From IMG/VR virus record IMGVR_UViG_3300025770_000870, positions 177,919 through 241,918 of that record: a DNA stretch of 64,000 nucleotides, one strand, 5' to 3'. The translations under genes were made by a program, and so were the position numbers. Position 1 is the stretch's first letter. Every line of letters starts with the position of its first letter. Shown one piece after another: positions 10,692 to 22,436 of this stretch. Under the pieces are notes generated by a model. The model searched no databases. It saw nothing but the letters and a program-made list of their open reading frames with translations, and was not told the DNA's origin.

Positions 10692-11057
10692 ATGTACTTA
10701 AATAATAAAGATTTATATGTAGAGATTATCGTATCAAAAGCCCAAGGAAGATTAACCAGATCGGCTGAAAAAATGTTAGAACTTCTAGCTAAAAAAACAA
10801 TCAAAAAAATGAGATACTACTCAAATGACGACAAAATGGATTGTTATCAAAGTGGGTTGTTGGATATGTTCCAAAACTGGTTCAACTTCAATGAGGAAAA
10901 ATCGGTTAATGCCTTCGCATACTTTACAGAAGTCTTCAAGAGAGGTATTGCCAAGGGTTATAATGAACTTTATAAGAAAAAAGGTGATAACGAACACAAA
11001 ATAAAATTAATCTCAATAGAGGGTTCTAATGATGGTCAAGGTATTCACTCTTTGTAA
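10692..11057 (+). CDS. late-transcription sigma factor (T4 gp55-like, short)
   Basis: MYLNNKDLY start and NFNEEKSVNAFAYFT match gp55 blocks YVNNKEL and NF.PEK..N.FAYFT. Confidence 0.8.
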   Translation: MYLNNKDLYVEIIVSKAQGRLTRSAEKMLELLAKKTIKKMRYYSNDDKMDCYQSGLLDMFQNWFNFNEEKSVNAFAYFTEVFKRGIAKGYNELYKKKGDNEHKIKLISIEGSNDGQGIHSL

Positions 11058-11143
11058 TAAGTCATCAAAGGTATTCACATGTTTGGTCGGATCTCCGAAT
11101 TTGAGAGAAACCAAATAAGAAAACAGAAAATAAATAAGATACT

Positions 11144-11178
11144 AAAAAACCCACTCAAATAAATGAGTGGGTTTTTTT
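11144..11178. terminator. bidirectional intrinsic terminator
   Basis: AAAAAACCCACTCA-aataaa-TGAGTGGGTTTTTTT between convergent genes. Confidence 0.85.
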
Positions 11179-11196
11179 ATTTAATATAAATTATAT

Positions 11197-12279
11197 TTAT
11201 ACTGAAACTGGTACTTCACTAAATATCGTCTCTAACATTCTTTCAGTAACTTGGTATGGGTCACAATTAGAAGCTGGTCTTCTATCTTCAAAATACCCTT
11301 TCTTATCAACAATTGATTGTGCTGGTATTCTAATACTTGTGTCTCTCGTACTGTAACCGTGTGTAAATTCGTGTATAGTTGAAGTTTCATGTTCTCCTGT
11401 CATTCTCTTATCATTCTCTAATCCATATACTGCCATGTGCTCTTTGTGAGTTTCTTTTAATTTCATAACAGCTTCATCTATTAAAGATAATCCACCTTCT
11501 TCTCTCATTTCCTTTGTTGAGAAGTTAACGTGACACCCTGATCCATTCCAATCACCAGTCATTGGCTTTGGGTGTAATGATACAATAACATTGTATTTTT
11601 CAGCTACCCTTTCTAATAAGTATCTAGATACCCACATTTGGTCACATCCATTTAGTGGTTTCACTGGTCCAATTTGATATTCCCATTGGCCTAACATAAC
11701 TTCCGCATTTACTCCTGAGATGTCTAAATCAATTTCTATACACATATTCATATGATCTTCAACTATACCTCTACCAACAACACTATCAGATCCTATACCA
11801 CAATAATAATCTCCTTGTTGTCTTGGTTCACCTTTTTCGAATCCTAATGGTAGTGCTCCATTCGTTCCAAATGGATTTCTATCTTTCTTCGTTAAAGTGT
11901 ATTCTTGTTCCCATCCAAACCAAGGTAATTCATCCTTTTCGATTGTTTCGTCTATACCTAGTTCTTCGATTTTTTCTTGTAGTTTGTTTCTGTGATTACT
12001 TTCGTGTTGTGTACCATCTGGGTTTAATACCTCACAAAAAACTAATTTGTTTTGGTCACCTCTAAATGGGTCCTTAGTTATGAAAACTGGATTTAGTAAA
12101 CAATCTGTATTCTTCCCCTTTCCCGCTTCTGCTTGTTTTGTTGAACTTCCATCAAATGACCACATTGAGTAGTCTTCCACTTTTAAGGAATCCTTTGTTT
12201 TAATTACTTTTGTTTTACTTCTTAGTTGTTGTGGATTTGACCCATCCAACCATATATACTCTAATTTAATATTTTGCAT
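11197..12279 (-). CDS. glnII: glutamine synthetase type II
   Basis: EYIWLDG, FDGSST, NAEVMLGQWEYQIGP, WNGSGCHVNFST, YFEDRRPASNCDPY. Confidence 0.95.
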   Translation of the reverse strand: MQNIKLEYIWLDGSNPQQLRSKTKVIKTKDSLKVEDYSMWSFDGSSTKQAEAGKGKNTDCLLNPVFITKDPFRGDQNKLVFCEVLNPDGTQHESNHRNKLQEKIEELGIDETIEKDELPWFGWEQEYTLTKKDRNPFGTNGALPLGFEKGEPRQQGDYYCGIGSDSVVGRGIVEDHMNMCIEIDLDISGVNAEVMLGQWEYQIGPVKPLNGCDQMWVSRYLLERVAEKYNVIVSLHPKPMTGDWNGSGCHVNFSTKEMREEGGLSLIDEAVMKLKETHKEHMAVYGLENDKRMTGEHETSTIHEFTHGYSTRDTSIRIPAQSIVDKKGYFEDRRPASNCDPYQVTERMLETIFSEVPVSV

Positions 12280-12375
12280 AAAAATAGTTTTTGTTTTTGT
12301 TTTTATTTTTATTTTTACTTTTTTTTTAAACTTTGTTTACTTTTTAATATAAAAAAACATATATAAAATATAATT

Positions 12376-12672
12376 ATGAATAAAGTTATTTTACAAATAT
12401 GGGAAGAATCAGAGAGGGGTCAAGGATCACGGCCTGATGGTTGCTCTTTACACATTGATTTAAATAATCAAAAAAAATATGTAAAGGATTCTTATGAAGA
12501 TAGAAGTGGTGATGTTCCTGATACCTATGAAAGAATTGTTGGTGATCCAATAGAGGCTTTTATTGATGATGGTTTATTTGATATTATCAATGAAGATAAA
12601 AATGTTAGATTATTTGAAAATGAGTTAAATAATCTAATAAAAATGGAAGAAATTATAATAAATCATGATTAA
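12376..12672 (+). CDS. hypothetical phage protein
   Basis: 98-aa ORF with WEESERG.G.RPDG.SLH block; AAACT-N15-TATAAA upstream. Confidence 0.65.
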   Translation: MNKVILQIWEESERGQGSRPDGCSLHIDLNNQKKYVKDSYEDRSGDVPDTYERIVGDPIEAFIDDGLFDIINEDKNVRLFENELNNLIKMEEIIINHD

Positions 12673-13006
12673 TGTATTTTACATATTACCTATTTTATTC
12701 ATTTTTATGAATGTTTATCATATGCTTAAGAATAAGCAATTAGATAAGAGATTTAGAGAAAGAGATATAATTGGTATGTCAAGATTGGATATTATATATT
12801 ATTTTACTAAAATTTCATATTGGATATGGGTACCAATTGGTTTCTTTACTAATCAACCAGAACTATTCTATGTATTATTTGTTTTGGGATTTTTGAAATT
12901 TCCCACTTACCATTTTAATAAAAATATTTTCAGGATCTATAATGATATATACCCAATTTTTTCTATATCCACACTAATTACAATTTTTTTTCATTGGTTG
13001 TTTTGA
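12665..13006 (+). CDS. small multi-pass membrane protein
   Basis: several hydrophobic segments; overlaps the upstream ORF. Confidence 0.6.
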   Translation: MINVFYILPILFIFMNVYHMLKNKQLDKRFRERDIIGMSRLDIIYYFTKISYWIWVPIGFFTNQPELFYVLFVLGFLKFPTYHFNKNIFRIYNDIYPIFSISTLITIFFHWLF

Positions 13007-13839
13007 AATTCGTACCATTTTTCAATATTAATAGATTCTGATACATCAAAGTTTTTAAAATTCTTAATTCTTGGTAATCTACCTTTCCATTTTTTATTTA
13101 AAAATAATAGTTTGTTTTTATCAATTTTACAATTTTTATTCGAAATACTACCCTCATTAAAAAGGTTTATCATTTCATCCATACTTAATGTTTTATGTTT
13201 TTTGTCAAAATTTGGATCCGGATGCGACCATCCAAATTTTACTAACCAATTTAATAAAACTTCTTTACTATATTCTTTGTAATCCTCTGTTGTTCCATTA
13301 CCAGTTCTTTTCGATAGTTTTTTATTACCTTCGAATAAAAGACCAGCATGTGTTATTTCTGGAAATTGTTTATCAGACTCAACCTCACAAATTTTATTCC
13401 ATATTATTCTTTGTTTTATTTCATTAGAAATATGATCTACACCTCTTACTATATTTGTTACGTCATAATCATAATCATCTAATATAGAAGAGAAGTTATA
13501 GGTTGGGAATCCATTATTTCTAAGTATAACCATTTCATAACCACCCATATCTAACACATAACCCTTTTCAGTTTTCGTTCCGATTTTCTCAGCAACTTCT
13601 TTATATCTGTCTAATCTTTCTGATTGTCTAAATGTTATATCACTATCCAAACCAAATTTATTCATTTGATCATAGATATAATCTATCCATTCTGGTTTAT
13701 TTCTTTCTTGATCGGTGTCATCAATACGTAGTATGAAAGTACCATTGTTAGCTTTAGCCATTAAATAGTTTAGCAATGCTGTTCTTAAAGTTCCTAAGTG
13801 GAATTGTCCTGTTGGTGACGGAGCTACTCTTGTTATCAT
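12991..13839 (-). CDS. minimal glutamyl-tRNA synthetase-like protein (no anticodon-binding domain)
   Basis: RVAPSPTG, HLGT (HIGH), LRIDDTD, QSER, RGVDH, KLSKR (KMSKS), LGWS-like FGWS; only 282 aa. Confidence 0.85.
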   Translation of the reverse strand: MITRVAPSPTGQFHLGTLRTALLNYLMAKANNGTFILRIDDTDQERNKPEWIDYIYDQMNKFGLDSDITFRQSERLDRYKEVAEKIGTKTEKGYVLDMGGYEMVILRNNGFPTYNFSSILDDYDYDVTNIVRGVDHISNEIKQRIIWNKICEVESDKQFPEITHAGLLFEGNKKLSKRTGNGTTEDYKEYSKEVLLNWLVKFGWSHPDPNFDKKHKTLSMDEMINLFNEGSISNKNCKIDKNKLLFLNKKWKGRLPRIKNFKNFDVSESINIEKWYEFQNNQ

Positions 13840-13894
13840 AATAATATTATTTTTACTTATTAAGTATATATTAAAAATAATATGAGTAAATTTT

Positions 13895-14416
13895 TTAACT
13901 AAACATTTTCAAATGATCTTCTGTTATTATAATAAATTCATAACCCTTTTTATTACACCAATTTATCATAGTTTCCCATTTATTCTTGTTCTTATATGCC
14001 ATTTTTAAGTCATACTCGAAGTTTTTCAACTTTTTAGTTCCTTTTTCAGGAACACTAAGTTTACCAGCATTAAGAGCGATTACCATATTATATTCCTTTT
14101 TAGGTTTTACTTCAACAACTACTTGTTTTAGTACACCATTTACCCTCATTTCATAATAGAAATCTACATAATACGTATGTTTTTTAACTTTAGCATCTCC
14201 ATTTTCAAAATGTGTCATTTGGTAAGGTATATTTAAACATTCGGCTCCCCACATTGTTACTTGATCATTATTATCTAACCAAAACATTATTTTCTTTTCC
14301 CAAGAACTCCTATAATAAAGTCCACGTTCAGCATTTAACTTTATCACTTTATCTTTATTTTTTGGTATATAATTACCACCATGATATTTAGAATTATTTG
14401 GTTTCGAGTTTAACAT
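13895..14416 (-). CDS. head completion protein (T4 gp4-like, TnsA-type nuclease fold)
   Basis: YRSSWE, HTYYVDF, VEVKP, W...GYEFIIITE. Confidence 0.9.
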   Translation of the reverse strand: MLNSKPNNSKYHGGNYIPKNKDKVIKLNAERGLYYRSSWEKKIMFWLDNNDQVTMWGAECLNIPYQMTHFENGDAKVKKHTYYVDFYYEMRVNGVLKQVVVEVKPKKEYNMVIALNAGKLSVPEKGTKKLKNFEYDLKMAYKNKNKWETMINWCNKKGYEFIIITEDHLKMFS

Positions 14417-14455
14417 TATGATTATAATTTTTTTTATATATAAAAGAAAAATGTC

Positions 14456-15172
14456 TTGATGGGTGAATTAGCAGAAAGAGTTAAAATAAATTTATTGGTT
14501 AATGGTAATGGCATTCCGGATAACTTCAAAAATAATTCTTTATTTTTTTATAATAAATATCAAGAATCTACTAAGGAGGTTCTAGGAGTTTCTGTTACTG
14601 ATATACAACCTGGAGGGTTTTATTTTATACACTATTTAGATACCTCTAGTTGGATGCAATTTTCTCCAGTTTTTGTATCTGATTATAAGAAATTCTCAAA
14701 TAAAATTATTATATTTGCTATCAACTTTAACTTTATACCTATTGAGGTTAGAACATTGTTATTTGATCAGTATGTTAGTGAACAAGACTTTGAGAATGAT
14801 GCTTTATTAAAAGTTGATTATAAAGGTGTTTATGATAAATTAAGAGATTTGGGTTTTGAATATGCTATGGTGGAGTATGATGCTTCAAGAGTTAAATTAG
14901 TACATAAAATAGAATTAGACCTATTACCAAGATTTTTATATTCACAACATCCTAAAAATATTTATGACCCTAAGAAGTTAATACAAATATGGGATGCTAA
15001 GATAGCTAATAGGGATGAGAGACATAAAGAAATGATGATGGCTAGTATAGATGAATTCTTTGATATAAATAATGATATATCGGAGAAGTATGGTGTTCTT
15101 AGAAACCACGTTTCTAGAATACGAAATAATATGAAGAAGTATGGACCGGGAGGTTCTAACACATGGACTTAA
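14456..15172 (+). CDS. DNA end-protector (T4 gp2-like), tentative
   Basis: PGGFYFIHY...SPVF...AINFNFIP resembles the gp2 G.MY.F.Y...P....GLNLHY pattern; adjacent to gp4-like gene. Confidence 0.5.
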   Translation: MMGELAERVKINLLVNGNGIPDNFKNNSLFFYNKYQESTKEVLGVSVTDIQPGGFYFIHYLDTSSWMQFSPVFVSDYKKFSNKIIIFAINFNFIPIEVRTLLFDQYVSEQDFENDALLKVDYKGVYDKLRDLGFEYAMVEYDASRVKLVHKIELDLLPRFLYSQHPKNIYDPKKLIQIWDAKIANRDERHKEMMMASIDEFFDINNDISEKYGVLRNHVSRIRNNMKKYGPGGSNTWT

Positions 15173-15184
15173 AAAATAATAATA

Positions 15185-15535
15185 ATGAGAATTTTCAGAA
15201 AAAGTAAAAAAGAACTTAGTGGTGATGTAAAACCTATGGGTATTAAATATACAATAGAAAGACCAAGTGAGTCTGATATTGCTAACTTACAGAGGCAAAG
15301 AGAAAATATGAAAAAGCCAATTACTAATAAGGTTGATAAGATGATTTTACAGGATATTTCGGATAGATTATATGGTCCTGATTCTGATGATTATATTAAA
15401 TCGTTGAATAAATTGAATAAATTATTTAAACCTAGAGCTGGAAAATCATGTAATGATTTCTTTGATCCAGATATAGTGGAGAATGTCAAGAAAAACCAGA
15501 AAAAAATAAATGAAATAATAAAACACGAGTCTTAG
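15185..15535 (+). CDS. hypothetical protein
   Basis: 116-aa ORF ending inside a terminator hairpin. Confidence 0.6.
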   Translation: MRIFRKSKKELSGDVKPMGIKYTIERPSESDIANLQRQRENMKKPITNKVDKMILQDISDRLYGPDSDDYIKSLNKLNKLFKPRAGKSCNDFFDPDIVENVKKNQKKINEIIKHES

Positions 15536-15548
15536 CTCGTGTTTTTTT
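15520..15548 (+). terminator. intrinsic terminator
   Basis: AAAACACGAG-tcttag-CTCGTGTTTT plus T-run. Confidence 0.75.
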
Positions 15549-15608
15549 GTTACAGGAGGTAGGTGTTAAAATTAATATATAACTTAAATTTTTAAATTAT
15601 TTTAATAT

Positions 15609-17306
15609 ATGCCATCATATAATAACTTTAACGGAGCAGCAGGAGCAGATTCTAACTTCGCTGCTAGTAATTCAGCAGTTGAGAATAAAGGACTATTTAG
15701 TCGTATTCTAAGAAACCTTTCAAATTATGGTATGAACTATGATGATATGATCATCAGAAATCAAGTTGGTATCGGTATAAATGAGGATCCATATTCAGCT
15801 AGAGGTAATTCGATGTATGATTTCTTTAGTCAGAGAGCTGTGGCTTCTGTTTTGAATAGAAAGTCAATACCTTATCTAGATAAAGCATATGGTGATAAGA
15901 GAAGAATACTTAGAGAGTATTCTATTAAGGATGAAATAAGAGATTTTGTGAGTACTATATCGGATGAGTCTATTGTTTTTAATGATGATGTTGCCTTTTG
16001 CTCACCTAAATCACTATCAAATGAATATCCACAAGAAGTAAGAGATAAGTATCAAGAATATTTCGAAAAAATATACAATAAGTATGGATTTTCTGATGGT
16101 ATTAGTGCTTGGGATATGATGAGAGATTTCCTTATTGATGGTTATATAGCTATTGAGATTATATATGATGATAAGAAAAAGAATATTGTTGGTTTCAATA
16201 GAATGAGACCAGAAACTTTAGTACCTGCTTATGAACCAGCTATTGGACACTTATGGATACAATTTCCAGAGGATCCACAATTAAGGAGAATATTTTTAGA
16301 TTCACAAATAGTTTATATATCATATTCAACACAGAATGATTATTCAGAAACTTCTTATGTTGAAGGTTTGATAAAACCATATAATCAATTAAAAATATTA
16401 GAACAAACTAGAATAATGTTCAATGTTATAAACGCTACTCTTTATCAAAAATTTACAATTCCTATTAAAGGATTGTCTAGACAAAGAGCAGAAGAACAAA
16501 TAGGTCAGTTAATACATGATTATTCAGAAGAAGTTGAGTGGGATGATAGTCTAGGAACACTTACTATCAATGGTGCTAAGCACTTACCTTACAATAAACA
16601 AATATGGTTTCCTGAGGGAGATGCTGGTACTCCTAATATGGAGATGGTTTCACCAGAAGGTCATGATTTGAATGATGAAACTATGTTATCTTGGTTTTAT
16701 AAGTCTCTTAAAAGAGCTTCTAAGATACCTATATCTAGATTCGAAGGTGAAAATGGTGGTGGTAACCTTTTTGGTGACGCTTCTGAGATGACTAGAGATG
16801 AGATTAAATTTCACAATTTTATTAGTAGATTAAGAGCTAACTTTAAAGAACTTATTGTTAAGCCACTTAAATTACAAATGTTAATTGAGTTTCCTGAATT
16901 AACAGAGGATGAGGTATTTACTAATAGAGTTGATATTGACTTCTATACTAATCAAATATTTGAAGATTGGAAGAAGATAAATAACTTAGCTAAGAAATCA
17001 GAAATAGTTGGAACTTTATTAGGTGTTATGAGAACAGATGAAAAACCTTATTTTCACATTGAGTGGATAATGGATAATATATTCAAGCTTACTCCAGAGG
17101 AGAAAGCTGAGAATGACAGGTATTGGGCTCGTGATGCTGGTGAAGGTGTTGGTTCTGGTGAAGAAGGCGCTGAAGGCGGAGATGATGGAGGCGACTTTGG
17201 TGAATCTGGTGATGTTGGTGGTGTAGATGATGCTGGTGGTGGAGATGATGGTGGAGATGCTGGTGGAGATGCTGGTGGAGATGACGGTGGAGAATTTGAA
17301 TTCTAA
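15609..17306 (+). CDS. portal protein (T4 gp20-like) with Gly/Asp-rich tail
   Basis: FLIDG, SYVEGLIKPYNQLKILE, ITRDE-like MTRDEIKFHNFISRLR; late promoter upstream. Confidence 0.92.
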   Translation: MPSYNNFNGAAGADSNFAASNSAVENKGLFSRILRNLSNYGMNYDDMIIRNQVGIGINEDPYSARGNSMYDFFSQRAVASVLNRKSIPYLDKAYGDKRRILREYSIKDEIRDFVSTISDESIVFNDDVAFCSPKSLSNEYPQEVRDKYQEYFEKIYNKYGFSDGISAWDMMRDFLIDGYIAIEIIYDDKKKNIVGFNRMRPETLVPAYEPAIGHLWIQFPEDPQLRRIFLDSQIVYISYSTQNDYSETSYVEGLIKPYNQLKILEQTRIMFNVINATLYQKFTIPIKGLSRQRAEEQIGQLIHDYSEEVEWDDSLGTLTINGAKHLPYNKQIWFPEGDAGTPNMEMVSPEGHDLNDETMLSWFYKSLKRASKIPISRFEGENGGGNLFGDASEMTRDEIKFHNFISRLRANFKELIVKPLKLQMLIEFPELTEDEVFTNRVDIDFYTNQIFEDWKKINNLAKKSEIVGTLLGVMRTDEKPYFHIEWIMDNIFKLTPEEKAENDRYWARDAGEGVGSGEEGAEGGDDGGDFGESGDVGGVDDAGGGDDGGDAGGDAGGDDGGEFEF

Positions 17307-17355: not shown

Positions 17356-17809
17356 ATGCCGCAGTTTTTGGGTCGGGTATATCAAAGTAAAATTGTGTTA
17401 CGCTATTACAACTTGGAAGTTTCATTTGTTTAACTTCTAGTAAACACCCCGATTCTAATATGTTTTTTAATTCTTTACCTTTTGGTGTATCTAGAACTTT
17501 TAATACTATTTTTAACTCATCCACTTTATTATTCGTTATGATAAAAGACATTGACCTAACAAAAAATGATATACTTTTTAATAATATATCAGAATATTCT
17601 GGTTTTCCTAAACTACCATATACCGGACTATTTATTTTTGATATTTCGGTTACGTCAAATCCAATCCTTTTACCTTCGTTTAATAAAACATTAAGTTTTA
17701 TCTCACGTTTATATTGTATCCATTGTGGAAATTTAGTTAGTAATCGATCATAGTTATTTAACTCAACATCATTTCCTAAAACAACATTATATTCTAGTAA
17801 ATCATCCAT
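17354..17809 (-). CDS. degenerate prohead-protease (gp21) paralog with REIKLNVLL motif
   Basis: VYGSLGKP and LKVLDTPKGKELKNILESGC align with VYGEFDHP and IKLLSTYWGKEAKALVDDGC of the 20295 protein. Confidence 0.6.
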   Translation of the reverse strand: MDDLLEYNVVLGNDVELNNYDRLLTKFPQWIQYKREIKLNVLLNEGKRIGFDVTEISKINSPVYGSLGKPEYSDILLKSISFFVRSMSFIITNNKVDELKIVLKVLDTPKGKELKNILESGCLLEVKQMKLPSCNSVTQFYFDIPDPKTAA

Positions 17810-19713
17810 TACATTTTTATGAAATCTATTTGTTTCTTTTCTAAATCAACACCATTAACTATGATAGTTATCTCATCACCTAATCTGATTCTATCCCCAA
17901 CATCATTAAAGATTTGATAGTTTTGTGTGTCTATATTATAATTACCTTCTAAAGATTGGTATCTTATCATACCCTCACATTTACTTTCTGTTAATTCAAC
18001 ATATAATCCCCAATCAGTTACACCAGAAACTATCCCAGTGAATACTTTCCCAATTTTATCTAAAAGATATTCGGCTTGTTTGTATTTTATAGAATCTCTT
18101 TGGGCTCTGGATGCTATCAATTCTCTACTTGAACACCATTTAGCCTCATCTTCAACTTTAGTAGGGTTTCCTTGTTTCTTATTATGTAAGAAATCAAGTA
18201 ACATTCTATGTGTCATTAAATCCGGATACCTACGTATTGGACTTGTGAAGTGTGAATAGTGTGTGAATCCTAATCCATAATGTCCTATGTTTTGTATTGT
18301 GTATGTTGCTTTAGACATACATCTAGTTACAACCGTACTTAACATATTTTCTTCTGGTGTTCCTTTAACATCTTGTAATAACTTGTTTATAGATTTTTTA
18401 AGATCTTCAGATTCGCCTTCTATTTTGAATTCGTGACCAAAAGTCTTACACACATTTGATAATGCTGTTAACTTCTCCATATTAGGAGTATCATGTACTC
18501 TAAATACATTAGTTCTCGAATTACTTGATAATAGTTTAGCAACAGATTTATTAGCTAGTAACATAAATTCTTCAATTAATTTATTAGCTTCTTTCTGTTC
18601 TTTGAAATAAACACCAATTGGTTTCTTATTATCCTCTGCTAATTCGAATCGAACTTCCACACCACCCATCTCTAATGAACCGTCTTTAATTCTTTTCTTT
18701 CTTATTTTCTTAGCTAATGTGTTTAGATGATTAATCATCAATGGATAAACACTACCATCACCTGTGTATTTTTCATCATTACCCTCGATTATCTCTTGAG
18801 CATCCTCATAAGCAAATCTCATATCAGAATGTATGACTGTTTTACCGTGCCATTCTTTAACAATTTTACCATCCGAGTCTAGTGTAAATACAACTGAAAA
18901 TGCTAACCTATCTTCATTAGGTTTTAATGAACATATTCCATTACTAAGTCTTTCTGGTAACATAGATACACATCTATCAACTAGATACACAGATGTTGCT
19001 CTTTCATAAGCTTCATCATCTAATTTAGTACCAGGTTTAACATAGTGTCCAACATCAGCAATATGTACTCCTACTTCAAATCTATTATCATTCATTACTT
19101 TAAGTGATAATGCGTCATCAAAATCACGAGCATCTACTGGGTCGATTGTTATTGTTGTTGTATCTCTCATATCTCTACGAGATTTTATTTCCTTTTCGGT
19201 TATTACTTCTGGTGTGAGTTCTGATTCGTTTATAACATCTTGTGGAAAATCAACTGGTAATCCATATTCATACATTATCGAATTCATCTCAGCGTTATTA
19301 TCACCAACATCTCCTAATATCTTAGTTATCTTAGCTTGTGGGGATTTACTATCTACCCACTTTGTGAGTTCGACTATAACCTTTTGGTTATCTTCCGATT
19401 TTAATCCACCCTTGATATAGAAATCAACTGGTATTCTTTTATTATCTGCTATAACAAATGTTGATTTACCATTAATATGTACCTTACCAACGAATTCTTT
19501 CTTATTCCTTGATATTGTGTTAATTACTTTAGCTTCTAATTTCCTATCACCCCTAAATACTTCTACAATTACTTTATCTAAGTGTAAAGCATTTTTAGTA
19601 TTCTTCTTATAAATGAAAATTGATTTATCGTTTATTGTGATTGTTGCGTGTCTGTTTGTTGAGAACTCTATTTGACCTTCGTAACGTTCTCCTTCTTTTA
19701 TATTATTATTCAT
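17809..19713 (-). CDS. rnr: ribonuclease R (RNB family 3'-5' exoribonuclease)
   Basis: TIDPVDARDFDDALS, VHIADV, HFTSPIRRYPD, C-terminal S1 domain; likely start MNNNIKEG at 19713. Confidence 0.95.
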   Translation of the reverse strand: MNNNIKEGERYEGQIEFSTNRHATITINDKSIFIYKKNTKNALHLDKVIVEVFRGDRKLEAKVINTISRNKKEFVGKVHINGKSTFVIADNKRIPVDFYIKGGLKSEDNQKVIVELTKWVDSKSPQAKITKILGDVGDNNAEMNSIMYEYGLPVDFPQDVINESELTPEVITEKEIKSRRDMRDTTTITIDPVDARDFDDALSLKVMNDNRFEVGVHIADVGHYVKPGTKLDDEAYERATSVYLVDRCVSMLPERLSNGICSLKPNEDRLAFSVVFTLDSDGKIVKEWHGKTVIHSDMRFAYEDAQEIIEGNDEKYTGDGSVYPLMINHLNTLAKKIRKKRIKDGSLEMGGVEVRFELAEDNKKPIGVYFKEQKEANKLIEEFMLLANKSVAKLLSSNSRTNVFRVHDTPNMEKLTALSNVCKTFGHEFKIEGESEDLKKSINKLLQDVKGTPEENMLSTVVTRCMSKATYTIQNIGHYGLGFTHYSHFTSPIRRYPDLMTHRMLLDFLHNKKQGNPTKVEDEAKWCSSRELIASRAQRDSIKYKQAEYLLDKIGKVFTGIVSGVTDWGLYVELTESKCEGMIRYQSLEGNYNIDTQNYQIFNDVGDRIRLGDEITIIVNGVDLEKKQIDFIKM

Positions 19714-19723
19714 ATTCCTTTTA

Positions 19724-20137
19724 TTAGGAAATATCGTTTTGTTTATTATCGCGTTTGGATATGTTGTCAACACCGTACTTATCTATAAGTGTTTTTTTCA
19801 TTTTTTTCAATATTTTATTGTTTTGTATTGGATAGTCAACACCGTAATTTTCTCTTAATGATTTTTTCCTTTTTGATTCTGAGCATTTTCTACAAGAGTA
19901 TTCACCCCAGTTATTATCATATTTAATATAGTTCTTGAATATTACATCCTTTTCGATTCCACATTTATCACACTTACACTTTATTTTATAGTGGGATCCT
20001 TTGGATAGTAATTCAACTGGTATTATTAATAATTCACCAATTGTAACATCACTATATCCTAGATTTTCATAGTATGAATAGTTTGCTTCGCTTATTTTAA
20101 CTTTTATCTCTCTAGTTATTATCATAAAAAACCTCAA
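19724..20137 (-). CDS. zinc-ribbon protein with KYGV repeats (homing-endonuclease-like DNA-binding remnant)
   Basis: CKCDKC...CRKC followed by NYGVDYP and KYGVDNI repeats; no nuclease motif seen. Confidence 0.5.
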   Translation of the reverse strand: MRFFMIITREIKVKISEANYSYYENLGYSDVTIGELLIIPVELLSKGSHYKIKCKCDKCGIEKDVIFKNYIKYDNNWGEYSCRKCSESKRKKSLRENYGVDYPIQNNKILKKMKKTLIDKYGVDNISKRDNKQNDIS

Positions 20138-20294: not shown

Positions 20295-22436
20295 ATGAAA
20301 CCGGTTTTAATAGTAGAAAATTCACAAAACCAACTTATTAGAGAGAGTAACTCTGCTAATAAGGGGTACACATTAGGTGGTACATTCACCGAATTCGGTG
20401 TCAAGAACAGAAATGAACGTATTTATTCGGCTGATAAATTTTTACCAGCATTGAATGAAATGAATGAACGTATAAGTGGCTTAGGTGCTGTTTATGGTGA
20501 ATTCGATCATCCAGACGTTTTTGACACATCACTCTCAAGAGCCTCGCATATTATCACAAAGGCAAGTTATATCCAAGAGAAAAATATCGTAGCGGGAGAG
20601 ATTAAATTACTAAGTACTTACTGGGGTAAGGAAGCAAAAGCACTTGTCGATGACGGGTGTCCTGTATTCGTTTCTTCAAGAGCTGCTGGTATTACTGAAT
20701 CTGATGGTTCAGTTTCCCTTAAAAAATTATTTACTTATGACATTGTTGCTGACCCAGGATTTGCGTCAGCTAAAATGGATGTTAAGGTACTTAATGAGTC
20801 ATTGGGATATAATGACGAAAAATCTAACTTTAGGATATATGAAATGTCCGATGAGTCAAAAATAAATGAGTTATTCAATATGAACAAAAATGAGTTTGTA
20901 ACAAAAAAACAATTGACTGACTACTCTAACTACTTAGTTAACGAATTAGCATCAACTAAGAAGACAGTTAATACAGCCATTACTAAAGGTAATGTAGCTC
21001 CAAAGAAATTGGAACAATTATTAGAGTATTATGAAGAGTTAAACAACTCTAATTCAAAAGTAGCTAAGTATCTTGATTATTTATCAGAAAAGGTACAAAT
21101 AGTAGTTAATGAGAATAAATCATTAAAGAAGACAACTGAGAAATTAGTTAAACATAATGATTATTTAGCAGAAAACTTAGAGAAATCTATTAATTACGCT
21201 GAGTATTTAGGTGAAAACTTAGATAAGAACATTGATTATTCTGAGTATTTAGCTGAGAATTTAGACAAGAACATATCTTATGCTGAGTATTTAGCTGAGA
21301 ATGTTGATAAAAACATTTCATATTCTGAGTATTTAGCTGAGAGTTTAGATAAGAACATTGCTTATTCTGAATATATCGCTGAGAATTTAGACAAAAACAT
21401 CGCTTATTCTGAGTATATCGCTGAGAATTTAGACAAAAACATTGCTTACTCTGAGTATATCGCAGAAAACGTTGATAATAATATCGCTTATTCTGAATAC
21501 TTATCTGAGCATGTTGAAGGTAACATTGCTTACTCTGAGTATATCGCAGAACATTTAGATGATAACATCGCTTATTCTGAGTATGTAGCAGAGAATCTTG
21601 ACAAATCAATTAATTATCAAGGATTGATAGTTGAGAGATTAAACGGAGATAAATTATTTGAATCTGTTGAAGGATCTGAAAGCTTCCCATCTCTAGACGA
21701 TGCTGGTTTTGAAGCTTTTGATGATGAAGAAAACAAAGATGAAGAAAATTGTAATCTTGAAGTATCATTAGATAATAATGATGAAGAAAATGGTGTTGAA
21801 GAATCTGTTGAGAATACAGATGATTACGCAACAGAAGAAAACAAAGATGAAGAAAATAAAGATGAAGAAAACAAAGAAGATAAAACTGAAAGCCATGATA
21901 TGGTAAACGGTGATAGTGATTCTGAATTATCTGAATCTATTGATAAACTAATTGAAGAAGCTAAAAAACGAAAAGTTTCTGAAACAACAGATGTGAATTT
22001 CTTGAAGTTCATGTCTAAATCACAAGTTGACAGCTTTTACGCTTTGTCAAATGACGAACAAGAGTCAGTTAAAGTCCATATAAACGAAAGAGACTACTTT
22101 ACTCAAAAAGATGTTTTGTTATTGATATCTGAAGCACTATCAACTAAGAACGAATCTCTTGAAGAGAGAATAATCAGATTGATGCCTGAAAACACAAAGC
22201 CAATCTGGGAACAATTAAACGACACTTCTAAGAAATCTATCTTGTCACAAGCTAGATTATATCCAGAAGACGTTTTAACTACTGAGGCACAAGTTGAACA
22301 TTTTTGGTCAACTAGAAAGCTAAAGACAAATGAGTCTGTAACAAAGAAACTTGTATCACATGAAAGCCTTATCCAAGAAGATAAACTTTCAGATAATGAT
22401 GTTCAAGCGATAATGGAAAGATTCAAAAATATTTAA
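20295..22436 (+). CDS. prohead protease (gp21-like) fused to a scaffold/core domain
   Basis: KNRNERIY, YGEFDHP, SHII, VSSRAAG, DIVADPG; then 14-aa repeats and an acidic region. Confidence 0.9.
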   Translation: MKPVLIVENSQNQLIRESNSANKGYTLGGTFTEFGVKNRNERIYSADKFLPALNEMNERISGLGAVYGEFDHPDVFDTSLSRASHIITKASYIQEKNIVAGEIKLLSTYWGKEAKALVDDGCPVFVSSRAAGITESDGSVSLKKLFTYDIVADPGFASAKMDVKVLNESLGYNDEKSNFRIYEMSDESKINELFNMNKNEFVTKKQLTDYSNYLVNELASTKKTVNTAITKGNVAPKKLEQLLEYYEELNNSNSKVAKYLDYLSEKVQIVVNENKSLKKTTEKLVKHNDYLAENLEKSINYAEYLGENLDKNIDYSEYLAENLDKNISYAEYLAENVDKNISYSEYLAESLDKNIAYSEYIAENLDKNIAYSEYIAENLDKNIAYSEYIAENVDNNIAYSEYLSEHVEGNIAYSEYIAEHLDDNIAYSEYVAENLDKSINYQGLIVERLNGDKLFESVEGSESFPSLDDAGFEAFDDEENKDEENCNLEVSLDNNDEENGVEESVENTDDYATEENKDEENKDEENKEDKTESHDMVNGDSDSELSESIDKLIEEAKKRKVSETTDVNFLKFMSKSQVDSFYALSNDEQESVKVHINERDYFTQKDVLLLISEALSTKNESLEERIIRLMPENTKPIWEQLNDTSKKSILSQARLYPEDVLTTEAQVEHFWSTRKLKTNESVTKKLVSHESLIQEDKLSDNDVQAIMERFKNI
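21174..21635 (+). repeat. 11 x 42-bp in-frame tandem repeat (NLDKNIAYSEYIAE consensus)
   Basis: units counted in the translation from NLEKSINYAEYLGE to NLDKSINYQGLIVE. Confidence 0.9.

What the first reader, a model, noticed from the sequence alone, without database searches (positions are those of the whole stretch)
12991..13839. Extremely reduced GluRS-like enzyme
HIGH (HLGT) and KMSKS (KLSKR) motifs and the stem-contact fold (LLNWLVKFGWS...DKNKLLFLN) are present. The anticodon-binding domain is missing, and most of the zinc/acceptor-binding insertion between QSER and the VILR...PTYNF block is deleted (only about 25 aa, with no CxC). It is therefore smaller than GluQ in that region but keeps a part GluQ lacks. 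The C-terminal tail (RIKNFKNFDVSES, IEKWYEFQN) resembles the CTS motif, and the gene has a late promoter. Inference: it may glutamylate a non-canonical RNA, protein or small molecule.
Basis: partly seen in the sequence, partly recalled or inferred. Interest (0 to 1): 0.66.

Follow-up and report, generated by a model that had tools for sequence, protein, structure and literature searches.

The report
Phage mini glutamyl-tRNA synthetase
A giant marine phage carries an intact, strongly conserved glutamyl-tRNA synthetase cut down to its catalytic core plus the tRNA D-arm contact domain. It belongs to a large phage-only clade that often sits inside phage tRNA gene arrays, and nobody has tested what it does.

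Summary
The ORF at 12991-13839 (-) is real and encodes a 282-aa GluRS catalytic-domain protein. HIGH (HLGT), KMSKS (KLSKR), the complete glutamate pocket and the stem-contact (D-arm) domain are kept. The anticodon-binding domain is absent, and the acceptor-arm insertion is reduced to about 15 residues.

It is not a decaying gene: dN/dS is 0.06-0.21, and it is as conserved as the portal protein between related phages. It is also 66% identical in an unrelated 368-kb phage.

It belongs to a well-supported, phage-restricted clade of GluRS lacking the anticodon domain and carrying RIDDTD instead of RIEDTD. No close relative was found in 185,579 species genomes. In several lineages the gene lies inside or beside phage tRNA arrays or tRNA-repair genes.

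The host genome is a megaphage of at least 546 kb that also encodes a separate full-length GluRS.

The most likely function is a minimal tRNA glutamylating enzyme, but this is untested. It fails the membership tests for GluQRS. I rate it a new variant of a known kind, and I found no description of it in the literature I could search.

The parts
12991..13839 (-). Complete ORF, 282 aa plus stop: mini-GluRS (P0001)
   Evidence: An identical protein occurs in five other IMG/VR contigs.
13582..13839 (-). First half of the Rossmann fold (residues 1-86), including the glutamate-binding Arg4
   Evidence: PF00749 positions 4-89. Model strands and helices. Arg4 is invariant.
13789..13800 (-). HIGH motif, HLGT (residues 14-17)
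   Evidence: Read directly from the sequence. H14 and G16 are conserved.
13711..13728 (-). RIDDTD (residues 38-43), the clade's variant of the GluRS RIEDTD motif
   Evidence: Invariant in the family. It tracks the ABD-less clade.
13537..13581 (-). Remnant of the acceptor-arm-binding insertion (residues 87-101): a short beta-hairpin replacing about 80 residues of E. coli GluRS
   Evidence: Gap between the two HMM stretches. Alignments A1 and A3. The DTD-to-PTY spacing is 74, against 132-145 in canonical GluRS.
13291..13536 (-). Second half of the Rossmann fold (residues 102-183), with the glutamate-pocket residues Tyr114, Asp122 and Arg132
   Evidence: Residue roles are taken from PMC2978374.
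13306..13320 (-). KMSKS motif, KLSKR (residues 174-178). Ser176 corresponds to E. coli GltX Ser239.
   Evidence: Read from the sequence. S176, K177 and R178 are invariant.
13072..13290 (-). Stem-contact / D-arm-binding domain (residues 184-256), with a clade-specific 6-residue insertion (PDPNFD...)
   Evidence: TIGR00464 match runs to position 319. VIA alignment pairs model 1-255 with GluRS domains I-III. Alignment A3.
12994..13071 (-). Variable, mildly basic C-terminal tail (residues 257-282). Not conserved and modelled with low confidence.

Best explanation
The gene encodes an intact, strongly constrained member of a phage-specific clade of miniaturised glutamyl-tRNA synthetases.

It keeps the class I catalytic core: HIGH, KMSKS and the Arg/Arg/Asp/Tyr pocket that reads the glutamate side chain. 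It also keeps the helical domain that in GluRS grips the tRNA D-arm. It has lost the anticodon-binding domain and all but a hairpin of the acceptor-arm-binding insertion.

Most likely it still performs GluRS chemistry. It would bind ATP and L-glutamate, dock a tRNA through the D-arm and inner corner with the 3' end in the active site, and esterify glutamate onto tRNAGlu-type tRNAs, either the host's or those of phage tRNA arrays. There would be little or no anticodon checking. This would give the phage a host-independent supply of Glu-tRNA during infection.

Shown: the architecture, the conserved catalytic residues, purifying selection, restriction to phages, and linkage to tRNA genes and tRNA-repair genes.

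Inferred: catalytic activity, the tRNA acceptor, and the benefit to the phage.
For: Architecture and fold:
- The best sequence and structure matches are all bacterial GluRS. VIA Z is 26-28 with rmsd ~2 A over ~245 residues. The closest compact match is the Methylacidiphilum GluRS 8jpv; the same genus is listed among the pZBD-deleted GluRS in PMC4381286.

Glutamate pocket:
- T. thermophilus Arg5/Tyr187/Asp195/Arg205 (PMC2978374) correspond to Arg4/Tyr114/Asp122/Arg132, which are invariant across the family and the wider clade.

Selection and spread:
- dN/dS is 0.06-0.21 with saturated synonymous sites.
- Identity to a related 464-kb phage is 78.5%, against 75.6% for the portal protein. Identity is 65.8% in a 368-kb phage that shares no portal homology.

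tRNA linkage:
- The gene lies inside or at the edge of tRNA arrays in the L034/35, L036, L041 and L187 lineages, with tRNA-Glu genes within 2 kb in three of them. A tRNA-Trp gene is adjacent in G003.
- In L016-L020 and L030-31 its neighbours are RNA ligase, PNKP, PTH2 and an HD_4 hydrolase.
- Other cut-down aaRS cores lie adjacent in L033 and L187.
- Most phage tRNA-Glu genes near it carry the U11-A24, U13-G22, A46 and no-47 D-helix determinants (read by eye; identity set from PMC9976931).

Precedents:
- C-truncated E. coli GluRS is reported to remain tRNAGlu-specific (Dubois 2009, as cited in PMC2777447).
- The pZBD is dispensable or deleted in some cellular GluRS (PMC4381286).
- A 403-aa Margulisiibacteriota MAG protein annotated as GluRS has a spacing of 82, against 74 here.
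Against: - There are no biochemical data for any member of the clade.
- No natural class I synthetase lacking both the acceptor-binding insertion and the anticodon domain is known to charge tRNA.
- All known GluRS need correctly placed tRNA even to activate glutamate (PMC4393105).
- This phage already has a full-length GluRS (L050) and has no tRNA-Glu gene in its 546 kb of assembled DNA.
- Small phage contigs with no tRNA genes in the retrieved DNA also carry clade members, one of them two genes from an Acb2/Tad1-type anti-defence gene.
- The clade-wide Glu-to-Asp change in RIEDTD could signal an altered reaction.
- Neighbourhoods are not conserved overall.
- Metatranscriptome contigs covered the neighbouring glutamine synthetase gene but not this gene.
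Confidence: 0.45

Rival explanations
1. An RNA-modifying glutamyl transferase that works like GluQRS. It would activate glutamate without a canonical acceptor end and esterify it onto a modified nucleoside (for example queuosine in tRNAAsp) or another RNA hydroxyl.
For: - Like GluQRS, it is an ABD-less GluRS paralogue of about 280 aa.
- The structural match to GluQRS is significant (Z 20.6-22.6).
- It sits in tRNA arrays that also contain tRNA-Asp genes.
- It coexists with a full-length GluRS in this phage, as GluQRS does with GltX in bacteria.
Against: - It falls below the GluQRS equivalog cut-offs (123 vs 277 bits) and scores higher against gltX (218 bits).
- It lacks the Zn-type insertion that GluQRS keeps.
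- It retains the full D-arm-contact domain.
- Its sister lineages are ABD-bearing GluRS.
- GluRS structures score higher than GluQRS.
Confidence: 0.15
2. A glutamate-adenylating ligase for a non-RNA acceptor, such as a small molecule, a protein or a DNA base. Loss of the insertion domain would have opened the active site.
For: - The tRNA-handling domains are heavily reduced.
- The RIEDTD motif is altered clade-wide.
- Some members lie beside GSP_synth, nucleotidyltransferase or methyltransferase genes, or beside a glutamine synthetase as in this window.
- Phage DNA hypermodification can draw on the aminoacylation machinery (PMC13219725).
Against: - The D-arm-binding domain is retained and conserved, which would be pointless without tRNA.
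- No conserved partner gene exists.
- The glutamine synthetase neighbour is lineage-specific and absent in L027/L028.
- The tRNA-array linkage recurs across lineages.
Confidence: 0.13
3. A decoy or bypass for host defences that act on GluRS or tRNAGlu, such as HipA-type kinases that phosphorylate GltX Ser239. It would either soak up the toxin or supply an enzyme the toxin cannot reach.
For: - HipA inactivates GltX at the KLSKR serine (PMC8262856).
- A HipA-like/DUF3037 pair is an experimentally shown anti-phage system and also occurs in Bacteroidota (PMC12548924).
- The KLSKR serine is invariant here.
- The L016-L020/L030-31 neighbourhood combines PTH2, an HD_4 hydrolase, RNA ligase and PNKP, which I read as possible counters to translation-targeting toxins (the counter-toxin reading is my inference).
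- One clade member lies near an Acb2/Tad1 gene.
- Clade members occur in small phages with few translation genes.
Against: - The support is purely circumstantial.
- A pure decoy would not need the fully conserved glutamate pocket.
- The serine is also conserved in ordinary GluRS, so its presence is uninformative.
- No hip genes or host genomes were examined.
Confidence: 0.15
4. A decaying remnant of a captured gltX gene with no function.
For: Two domains are missing, and scores fall below the equivalog cut-offs.
Against: - The frame is intact in every copy seen, and homologues are numerous (7,883 proteins at E<=1e-5 in the word search, the best 120 all 225-284 aa with PF00749 only).
- dN/dS is 0.06-0.21.
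- Catalytic residues are invariant.
- It is as conserved as the portal protein.
- The model is confident.
Confidence: 0.02

Closest known systems
Bacterial glutamyl-tRNA synthetase (GltX), especially the pZBD-deleted forms (group V of Chongdar et al. 2015, PMC4381286; closest compact structure 8jpv, Methylacidiphilum)
   Same: - Same fold for domains I and III (Z ~27, rmsd 2.0 A).
- HIGH and KMSKS motifs.
- Identical glutamate-binding residues.
- 30-38% sequence identity.
- No zinc motif.
   Different: - No anticodon-binding domains.
- Domains I-III span 255 residues here, against 286 in 8jpv and ~312 in proteobacterial GluRS.
- The hairpin part of the acceptor-binding domain is also gone.
- RIDDTD replaces RIEDTD.
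- There are two small clade-specific insertions.
- It is found only in phages.
GluQRS / YadB (glutamyl-queuosine tRNAAsp synthetase)
   Same: A free-standing, ABD-less paralogue of the GluRS catalytic domain, of similar length.
   Different: - GluQRS keeps a Zn-type insertion and lacks the last stem-contact helix.
- The phage protein fails the GluQRS HMM cut-offs.
- On sequence, structure and tree it is closer to GluRS.
Engineered C-truncated E. coli GluRS (residues ~1-314; Dubois et al. 2009, Dasgupta et al. 2009, as cited in PMC2777447 and PMC3927822)
   Same: A catalytic domain plus D-arm-contact domain without the anticodon domain. It is reported to remain tRNAGlu-specific.
   Different: The laboratory construct keeps the whole acceptor-binding insertion. 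The phage protein is a natural product that has also lost that insertion.
Class I synthetase 'urzymes' (laboratory constructs lacking CP1 and the anticodon domain; from my own knowledge, not checked here)
   Same: The same two parts are removed from a class I core.
   Different: Urzymes are engineered and about 130 aa long. This protein is a natural, selected 282-aa enzyme that keeps the stem-contact domain.
Full-length aaRS genes of huge phages (Al-Shayeb et al. 2020, PMC7162821)
   Same: Encoded by a Mahaphage-type megaphage. The same phage has such a full-length, Bacteroidota-like GluRS (L050).
   Different: Only ~30% identical to that GluRS, with a different origin and a reduced architecture. 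That paper and the jumbo-phage review PMC7824862 do not mention truncated GluRS.

Membership tests
Canonical bacterial GluRS (TIGR00464 gltX_bact) | Class I HIGH and KMSKS ATP-binding motifs | tested here: met
   HLGT at residues 14-17 and KLSKR at 174-178; conserved in the family.
Canonical bacterial GluRS (TIGR00464 gltX_bact) | Glutamate-specific pocket (T. thermophilus Arg5, Tyr187, Asp195, Arg205) | tested here: met
   Arg4, Tyr114, Asp122 and Arg132 are invariant. Residue roles are from PMC2978374.
Canonical bacterial GluRS (TIGR00464 gltX_bact) | Acceptor-arm-binding insertion domain (domain II / CP1) | tested here: not met
   Profile positions ~89-175 are unmatched. About 15 residues remain. 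The spacing is 74, against 132-145 in canonical GluRS.
Canonical bacterial GluRS (TIGR00464 gltX_bact) | D-arm-binding / stem-contact helical domain (domain III) | tested here: met
   The HMM match runs to position 319. Model residues 184-256 superpose on GluRS.
Canonical bacterial GluRS (TIGR00464 gltX_bact) | C-terminal anticodon-binding domain (PF19269) | tested here: not met
   The protein ends at residue 282. There is no PF19269 match in G000, G003 or G004; the only match in G001 belongs to a separate 495-aa GluRS.
Canonical bacterial GluRS (TIGR00464 gltX_bact) | Score above the curated equivalog cut-off | tested here: not met
   217.9 bits, against a cut-off of 289.95.
Canonical bacterial GluRS (TIGR00464 gltX_bact) | tRNA-dependent glutamate activation and formation of Glu-tRNAGlu | not testable with these tools
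   Needs enzyme assays.
GluQRS (TIGR03838 / PRK05710) | Score above the curated equivalog cut-offs | tested here: not met
   123.2 bits against 276.7; the other four GluQRS models are also below cut-off.
GluQRS (TIGR03838 / PRK05710) | Retained insertion domain, usually with a CxC...Yx3C zinc motif | tested here: not met
   There is no Cys in residues 76-103 and the insertion is deleted. Motif definition is from PMC4381286.
GluQRS (TIGR03838 / PRK05710) | Closer kinship to GluQRS than to GluRS | tested here: not met
   38% identity to E. coli GluRS against 32% to GluQRS. Z is 26-28 against 20.6-22.6. The sister lineages carry anticodon domains. Caveat: GluQRS served as the outgroup of the tree.
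GluQRS (TIGR03838 / PRK05710) | Glutamylation of queuosine-34 of tRNAAsp | not testable with these tools
   Needs biochemistry.
pZBD-deleted cellular GluRS (Chongdar group V) | pZBD cut to 10-17 residues, with the rest of domain II and the anticodon domain kept | tested here: not met
   The pZBD is deleted, but the remaining hairpin (~30 residues) and the anticodon domain are also missing.
Phage 'RIDDTD' mini-GluRS clade (defined here) | No anticodon domain, Asp in place of Glu in RIEDTD, a stem-contact insertion, and monophyly | tested here: met
   A clade of 47 representatives (41 both ABD-less and RIDDTD) has SH-like support of 99. The window's family is a subclade with support of 100. This is a FastTree analysis only.

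The most novel reading that the evidence does not exclude
The mini-GluRS clade is a phage counter-defence tool. It would be a GluRS stripped of the parts that host toxins or regulators recognise. It would keep tRNAGlu charged, or act as a decoy, when HipA-type kinases or similar abortive-infection systems switch off host GltX. It would then belong with the RNA ligase/PNKP, PTH2 and alarmone-hydrolase genes that sit beside it in some phages.
Probability: 0.15. Interest if true: 0.85.

Novelty: new variant of a known kind. Interest (0 to 1): 0.62.

Why it matters
If the protein is active, it would be the smallest natural GluRS-type enzyme, working without the two modules thought necessary to place and select tRNA. 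That gives a natural test case for how little of a class I synthetase suffices, a question so far addressed with engineered 'urzymes' and truncations.

The clade is large and phage-restricted. It has moved between unrelated phages and is tied to phage tRNA arrays. It probably reflects a common but unrecognised way in which phages control Glu-tRNA supply or evade translation-directed host defences.

It also shows that counts of 'tRNA synthetases' in phage genomes may include proteins that are not ordinary synthetases.

Tried and rejected
- **Late promoter.** No TATAAATA lies upstream, and promoter-like sites occur at chance level in this AT-rich DNA.
- **CTS-like tail.** The tail is not conserved and has low model confidence.
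- **Split GluRS with the anticodon domain encoded separately.** PF19269 is absent from G000, G003 and G004. In G001 it is present only as part of a complete 495-aa GluRS.
- **Recent duplicate of the phage's own GluRS.** Rejected, since identity is only ~30%.
- **Functional link to the neighbouring glutamine synthetase.** The GS gene is missing in L027/L028, where gene order is otherwise the same.
- **A conserved partner gene.** None was found across 38 viral loci.
- **Cellular homologues of the reduced form.** The genome-contig scan gave only ordinary GluRS at 34% identity or less over the whole query.
- **Cultured-phage homologues.** None was found except the metagenomic record LR745206.1. 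The PHROGs hit is to a family whose 493-position profile is the length of a full GluRS.
- **RNAs in the window.** No tRNA and no Rfam family was found.
- **Expression.** RNA-library contigs cover only the GS gene (11281-12121). Contigs cannot show absence, so this decides nothing.
- **C-terminal extensions in some clade members.** They have no Pfam domain, so there is no domain-fusion clue.
- **Literature.** No description of a truncated phage GluRS turned up. The Sekine 2003 structure paper was not held, so the tRNA-contact residues could not be mapped.
- **Complex prediction** was not used, because no protein partner was indicated.

Full report
**1. The observation**

The ORF at 12991-13839 on the minus strand is open and encodes 282 residues. 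Pfam PF00749, the GluRS/GlnRS catalytic domain, matches at 2e-47 in two stretches. NCBIfam gltX_bact matches residues 102-255 to profile positions 173-319 of 470. HLGT (residues 14-17) and KLSKR (174-178) are present.

Against E. coli GluRS (PDB 8i9i), residues 3-86 align to 5-89 and residues 102-256 align to 169-315. About 80 residues of the acceptor-arm insertion are therefore replaced by about 15, none of them Cys, and nothing follows the stem-contact domain.

Scores are below the curated cut-offs for both gltX (218 vs 290 bits) and GluQRS (123 vs 277 bits).

An AlphaFold2 model built on 16 homologues is confident (pLDDT 88, pTM 0.84) except for the last ~27 residues. It superposes on bacterial GluRS domains I-III with Z 26-28. 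For example, model 1-255 aligns to 8jpv 7-292 at rmsd 2.0 A, and to 7k86 3-314. GluQRS scores lower, at Z 20.6-22.6.

- The C-terminal tail is neither conserved nor confidently folded.
- There is no late-promoter octamer upstream, and promoter-like matches occur at chance level in this 30% GC DNA.

**2. The genome**

The window is the end of a 241,918-bp IMG/VR virus record. Bases 62447-241899 of that record are 99.999% identical to bases 1-179452 of a 483,262-bp viral contig. The two contigs join into at least 545.7 kb.

The portal protein is 92.5% identical to that of LR745206.1 (634 kb), 78% to LR756502.1 (642 kb) and ~31% to the Lak phages. This is therefore a Mahaphage-type megaphage. That group's largest genomes are predicted to infect Bacteroidetes (PMC7162821).

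The window carries T4-type genes: large terminase, gp15-like, gp55-like, portal, gp23-like capsid, DNA polymerase B and DnaB.

The same phage also encodes a separate full-length, 495-aa GluRS with an anticodon domain. It is only ~30% identical to the protein studied here. The reduced protein is therefore a distinct paralogue, not this phage's only GluRS.

**3. It is a selected gene**

The word search returned 7,883 proteins at E<=1e-5. The 120 best are all 225-284 aa, 67-100% identical, and carry PF00749 only. They lie on contigs of up to 348 kb.

Across 19 distinct viral copies, synonymous sites are saturated (pS 0.57-0.76), dN is 0.17-0.35, and dN/dS is 0.06-0.21.

Between this phage and a related 464-kb phage (G003), the protein is 78.5% identical, compared with 75.6% for the portal protein and 78.5% for the gp55-like protein. 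A 368-kb phage (G004) with no detectable portal similarity still carries a 65.8% identical copy. This implies transfer between unrelated large phages.

Homing-type endonuclease genes flank the gene in several lineages. The neighbour is TnsA-like here and GIY-YIG/NUMOD elsewhere.

**4. It belongs to a wider phage clade**

A profile search of 1.84 billion cluster representatives found 22,909 GluRS-type proteins. Among the best 150, about 48 lack the anticodon domain and are 250-330 aa long. Nearly all of these carry RIDDTD instead of the canonical RIEDTD.

The spacing from that motif to the PTY motif measures the size of the insertion:

| Group | Spacing |
|---|---|
| Ordinary GluRS | 132-145 |
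| pZBD-deleted forms | ~100-110 |
| The window's family | 74 |
| A few other representatives | 62-85 |

A FastTree of domains I-III gives a clade of 47 representatives with support of 99; 41 of them are both ABD-less and RIDDTD. The window's family forms a subclade with support of 100. The nearest outside lineages are small GluRS that still carry an anticodon domain. This fits stepwise loss: first the anticodon domain and the pZBD, then, independently in several sublineages, the rest of the insertion.

Every context examined is phage-like. Examples are an integrase/endolysin contig, a P22-portal contig with an Acb2/Tad1 gene two genes away, and 40-60 kb phage contigs. A scan of one genome per 185,579 prokaryotic species found no close relative, only ordinary GluRS at 34% identity or less over the whole query. 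The ESM Atlas places the protein in viral clusters.

**5. What it most likely does**

The four residues that form the glutamate-specific network in T. thermophilus GluRS are Arg5, Tyr187, Asp195 and Arg205 (PMC2978374). They correspond to Arg4, Tyr114, Asp122 and Arg132, which are invariant here. Glutamate and ATP binding are therefore very probably intact.

The domain that binds the tRNA D-arm in GluRS (described for P. aeruginosa GluRS in PMC12088422) is retained and conserved.

Genomic context repeatedly points to tRNA:
- The gene sits inside or at the edge of tRNA arrays in four separate lineages: G004/L034, L036, L041 and L187. tRNA-Glu genes lie within 2 kb in three of them.
- A tRNA-Trp gene is directly downstream in G003.
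- In the L016-L020/L030-31 lineage the gene lies between PTH2-like, HD_4 and ClpB-like genes on one side and RNA ligase and PNKP on the other.
- Other cut-down synthetase cores are adjacent in L033 (ArgRS-like) and L187 (class II).
- Most nearby phage tRNA-Glu genes carry the D-helix identity elements (U11-A24, U13-G22, A46, no residue 47) that are major determinants for E. coli GluRS (read by eye; PMC9976931).

Published work supports feasibility:
- A C-truncated E. coli GluRS is reported to stay tRNAGlu-specific (cited in PMC2777447 and PMC3927822).
- The pZBD part of the insertion is naturally deleted in some cellular GluRS (PMC4381286).
- A MAG protein annotated as GluRS combines an almost equally short insertion (spacing 82) with an anticodon domain.

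My best reading is therefore a minimal tRNA-glutamylating enzyme with relaxed anticodon control.

Several points argue against this reading:
- There is no biochemistry for any clade member.
- All known GluRS need correctly placed tRNA even to activate glutamate (PMC4393105), and here the placing domain is gone.
- This phage has a full-length GluRS and no tRNA-Glu gene in the assembled 546 kb.
- Small phage contigs with no tRNA genes in the retrieved DNA also carry clade members.

**6. Rivals**

A GluQRS-like RNA modification, a non-RNA acceptor and a decoy or bypass role all remain possible.

The decoy/bypass idea rests on two published facts. HipA inactivates GltX at the KLSKR serine (PMC8262856). 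A HipA-like/DUF3037 pair is a demonstrated anti-phage system that also occurs in Bacteroidota (PMC12548924). The link to this protein is inference only.

Pseudogene decay is excluded by the selection data.

**7. Novelty**

I found no description of this reduced phage GluRS. The sources checked were the huge-phage paper, a jumbo-phage review, the GluRS evolution papers, and keyword searches of the held literature. PHROGs has no family for it.

It is a new variant of a known kind, a GluRS paralogue. It has an architecture not reported for a natural synthetase, and its function is unknown.

Noticed in passing
window 11197-12279 (-): A 360-aa glutamine synthetase gene (Gln-synt_N + Gln-synt_C) lies two small ORFs away from the mini-GluRS. 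It is absent from L027/L028, where gene order is otherwise the same. It is the only part of 11000-16000 covered by metatranscriptome contigs (11281-12121). A bidirectional terminator-like hairpin lies at 11144-11177.
   Followed up: partly
window 13895-14416 (-); L020:6789-7886: A TnsA-like endonuclease gene lies directly upstream of the mini-GluRS. In other lineages a GIY-YIG/NUMOD homing endonuclease occupies the same side. This suggests the gene lies at a hot spot for mobile endonucleases.
   Followed up: partly
G000 1-241918 with G001 (L107-L131): The window's 242-kb record, rated 89% complete, overlaps a 483-kb contig by 179 kb at 99.999% identity. The phage genome is therefore at least 546 kb, and the completeness estimate is misleading. 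Only four tRNA genes (Arg, Cys, Met, Gln) are present in that span.
   Followed up: yes
L050:436-1923 (G001 298660-300147): A full-length 495-aa GluRS with an anticodon domain is encoded in the same phage. It resembles the long Bacteroidota type, with a DTD-to-PTY spacing of 154.
   Followed up: partly
L033:3252-4421; L187:6273-6995: Other apparently cut-down synthetase cores lie next to mini-GluRS genes: a 389-aa protein with a partial ArgRS catalytic-domain match, and a 240-aa class II (tRNA-synt_2b) core. Miniaturised aaRS may be a wider phage phenomenon.
   Followed up: no
G004 228804-228879; L036:6281-6359: ARAGORN calls tRNAs with CTA (amber) and TCA (opal) anticodons, plus several tRNAs with odd anticodon loops, in phages that carry the mini-GluRS. 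These may be suppressor tRNAs and could indicate stop-codon recoding. The calls were not checked.
   Followed up: no
window 17809-19773 (-): A 654-aa RNase R/II-type exoribonuclease (CSD2, RNB and S1 domains; RNB at 1e-110) is encoded between the portal and capsid genes, which is an unusual cargo for a structural module.
   Followed up: no
window 21138-21604 (+), inside ORF 20295-22436: A tandem array of about 9.5 copies of a 42-bp unit (14-aa repeat, 78% matches) lies inside a 713-aa protein with no Pfam match. The gene sits just upstream of the gp23-like capsid gene, so the protein may be a scaffold or decoration protein.
   Followed up: partly
window ~17130-17306 (+): The T4-type portal protein ends in a ~55-residue Gly/Asp/Glu-rich acidic tail that lies outside the Portal_T4 match.
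   Followed up: no
L016-L020, L030-L031 (about 4-11 kb in each locus): A recurrent cluster contains a PTH2-like gene, an HD_4 (RelA/SpoT-type hydrolase) gene, a ClpB-like ATPase, the mini-GluRS, RNA ligase and PNKP. It looks like a tRNA/translation repair or counter-defence island.
   Followed up: partly
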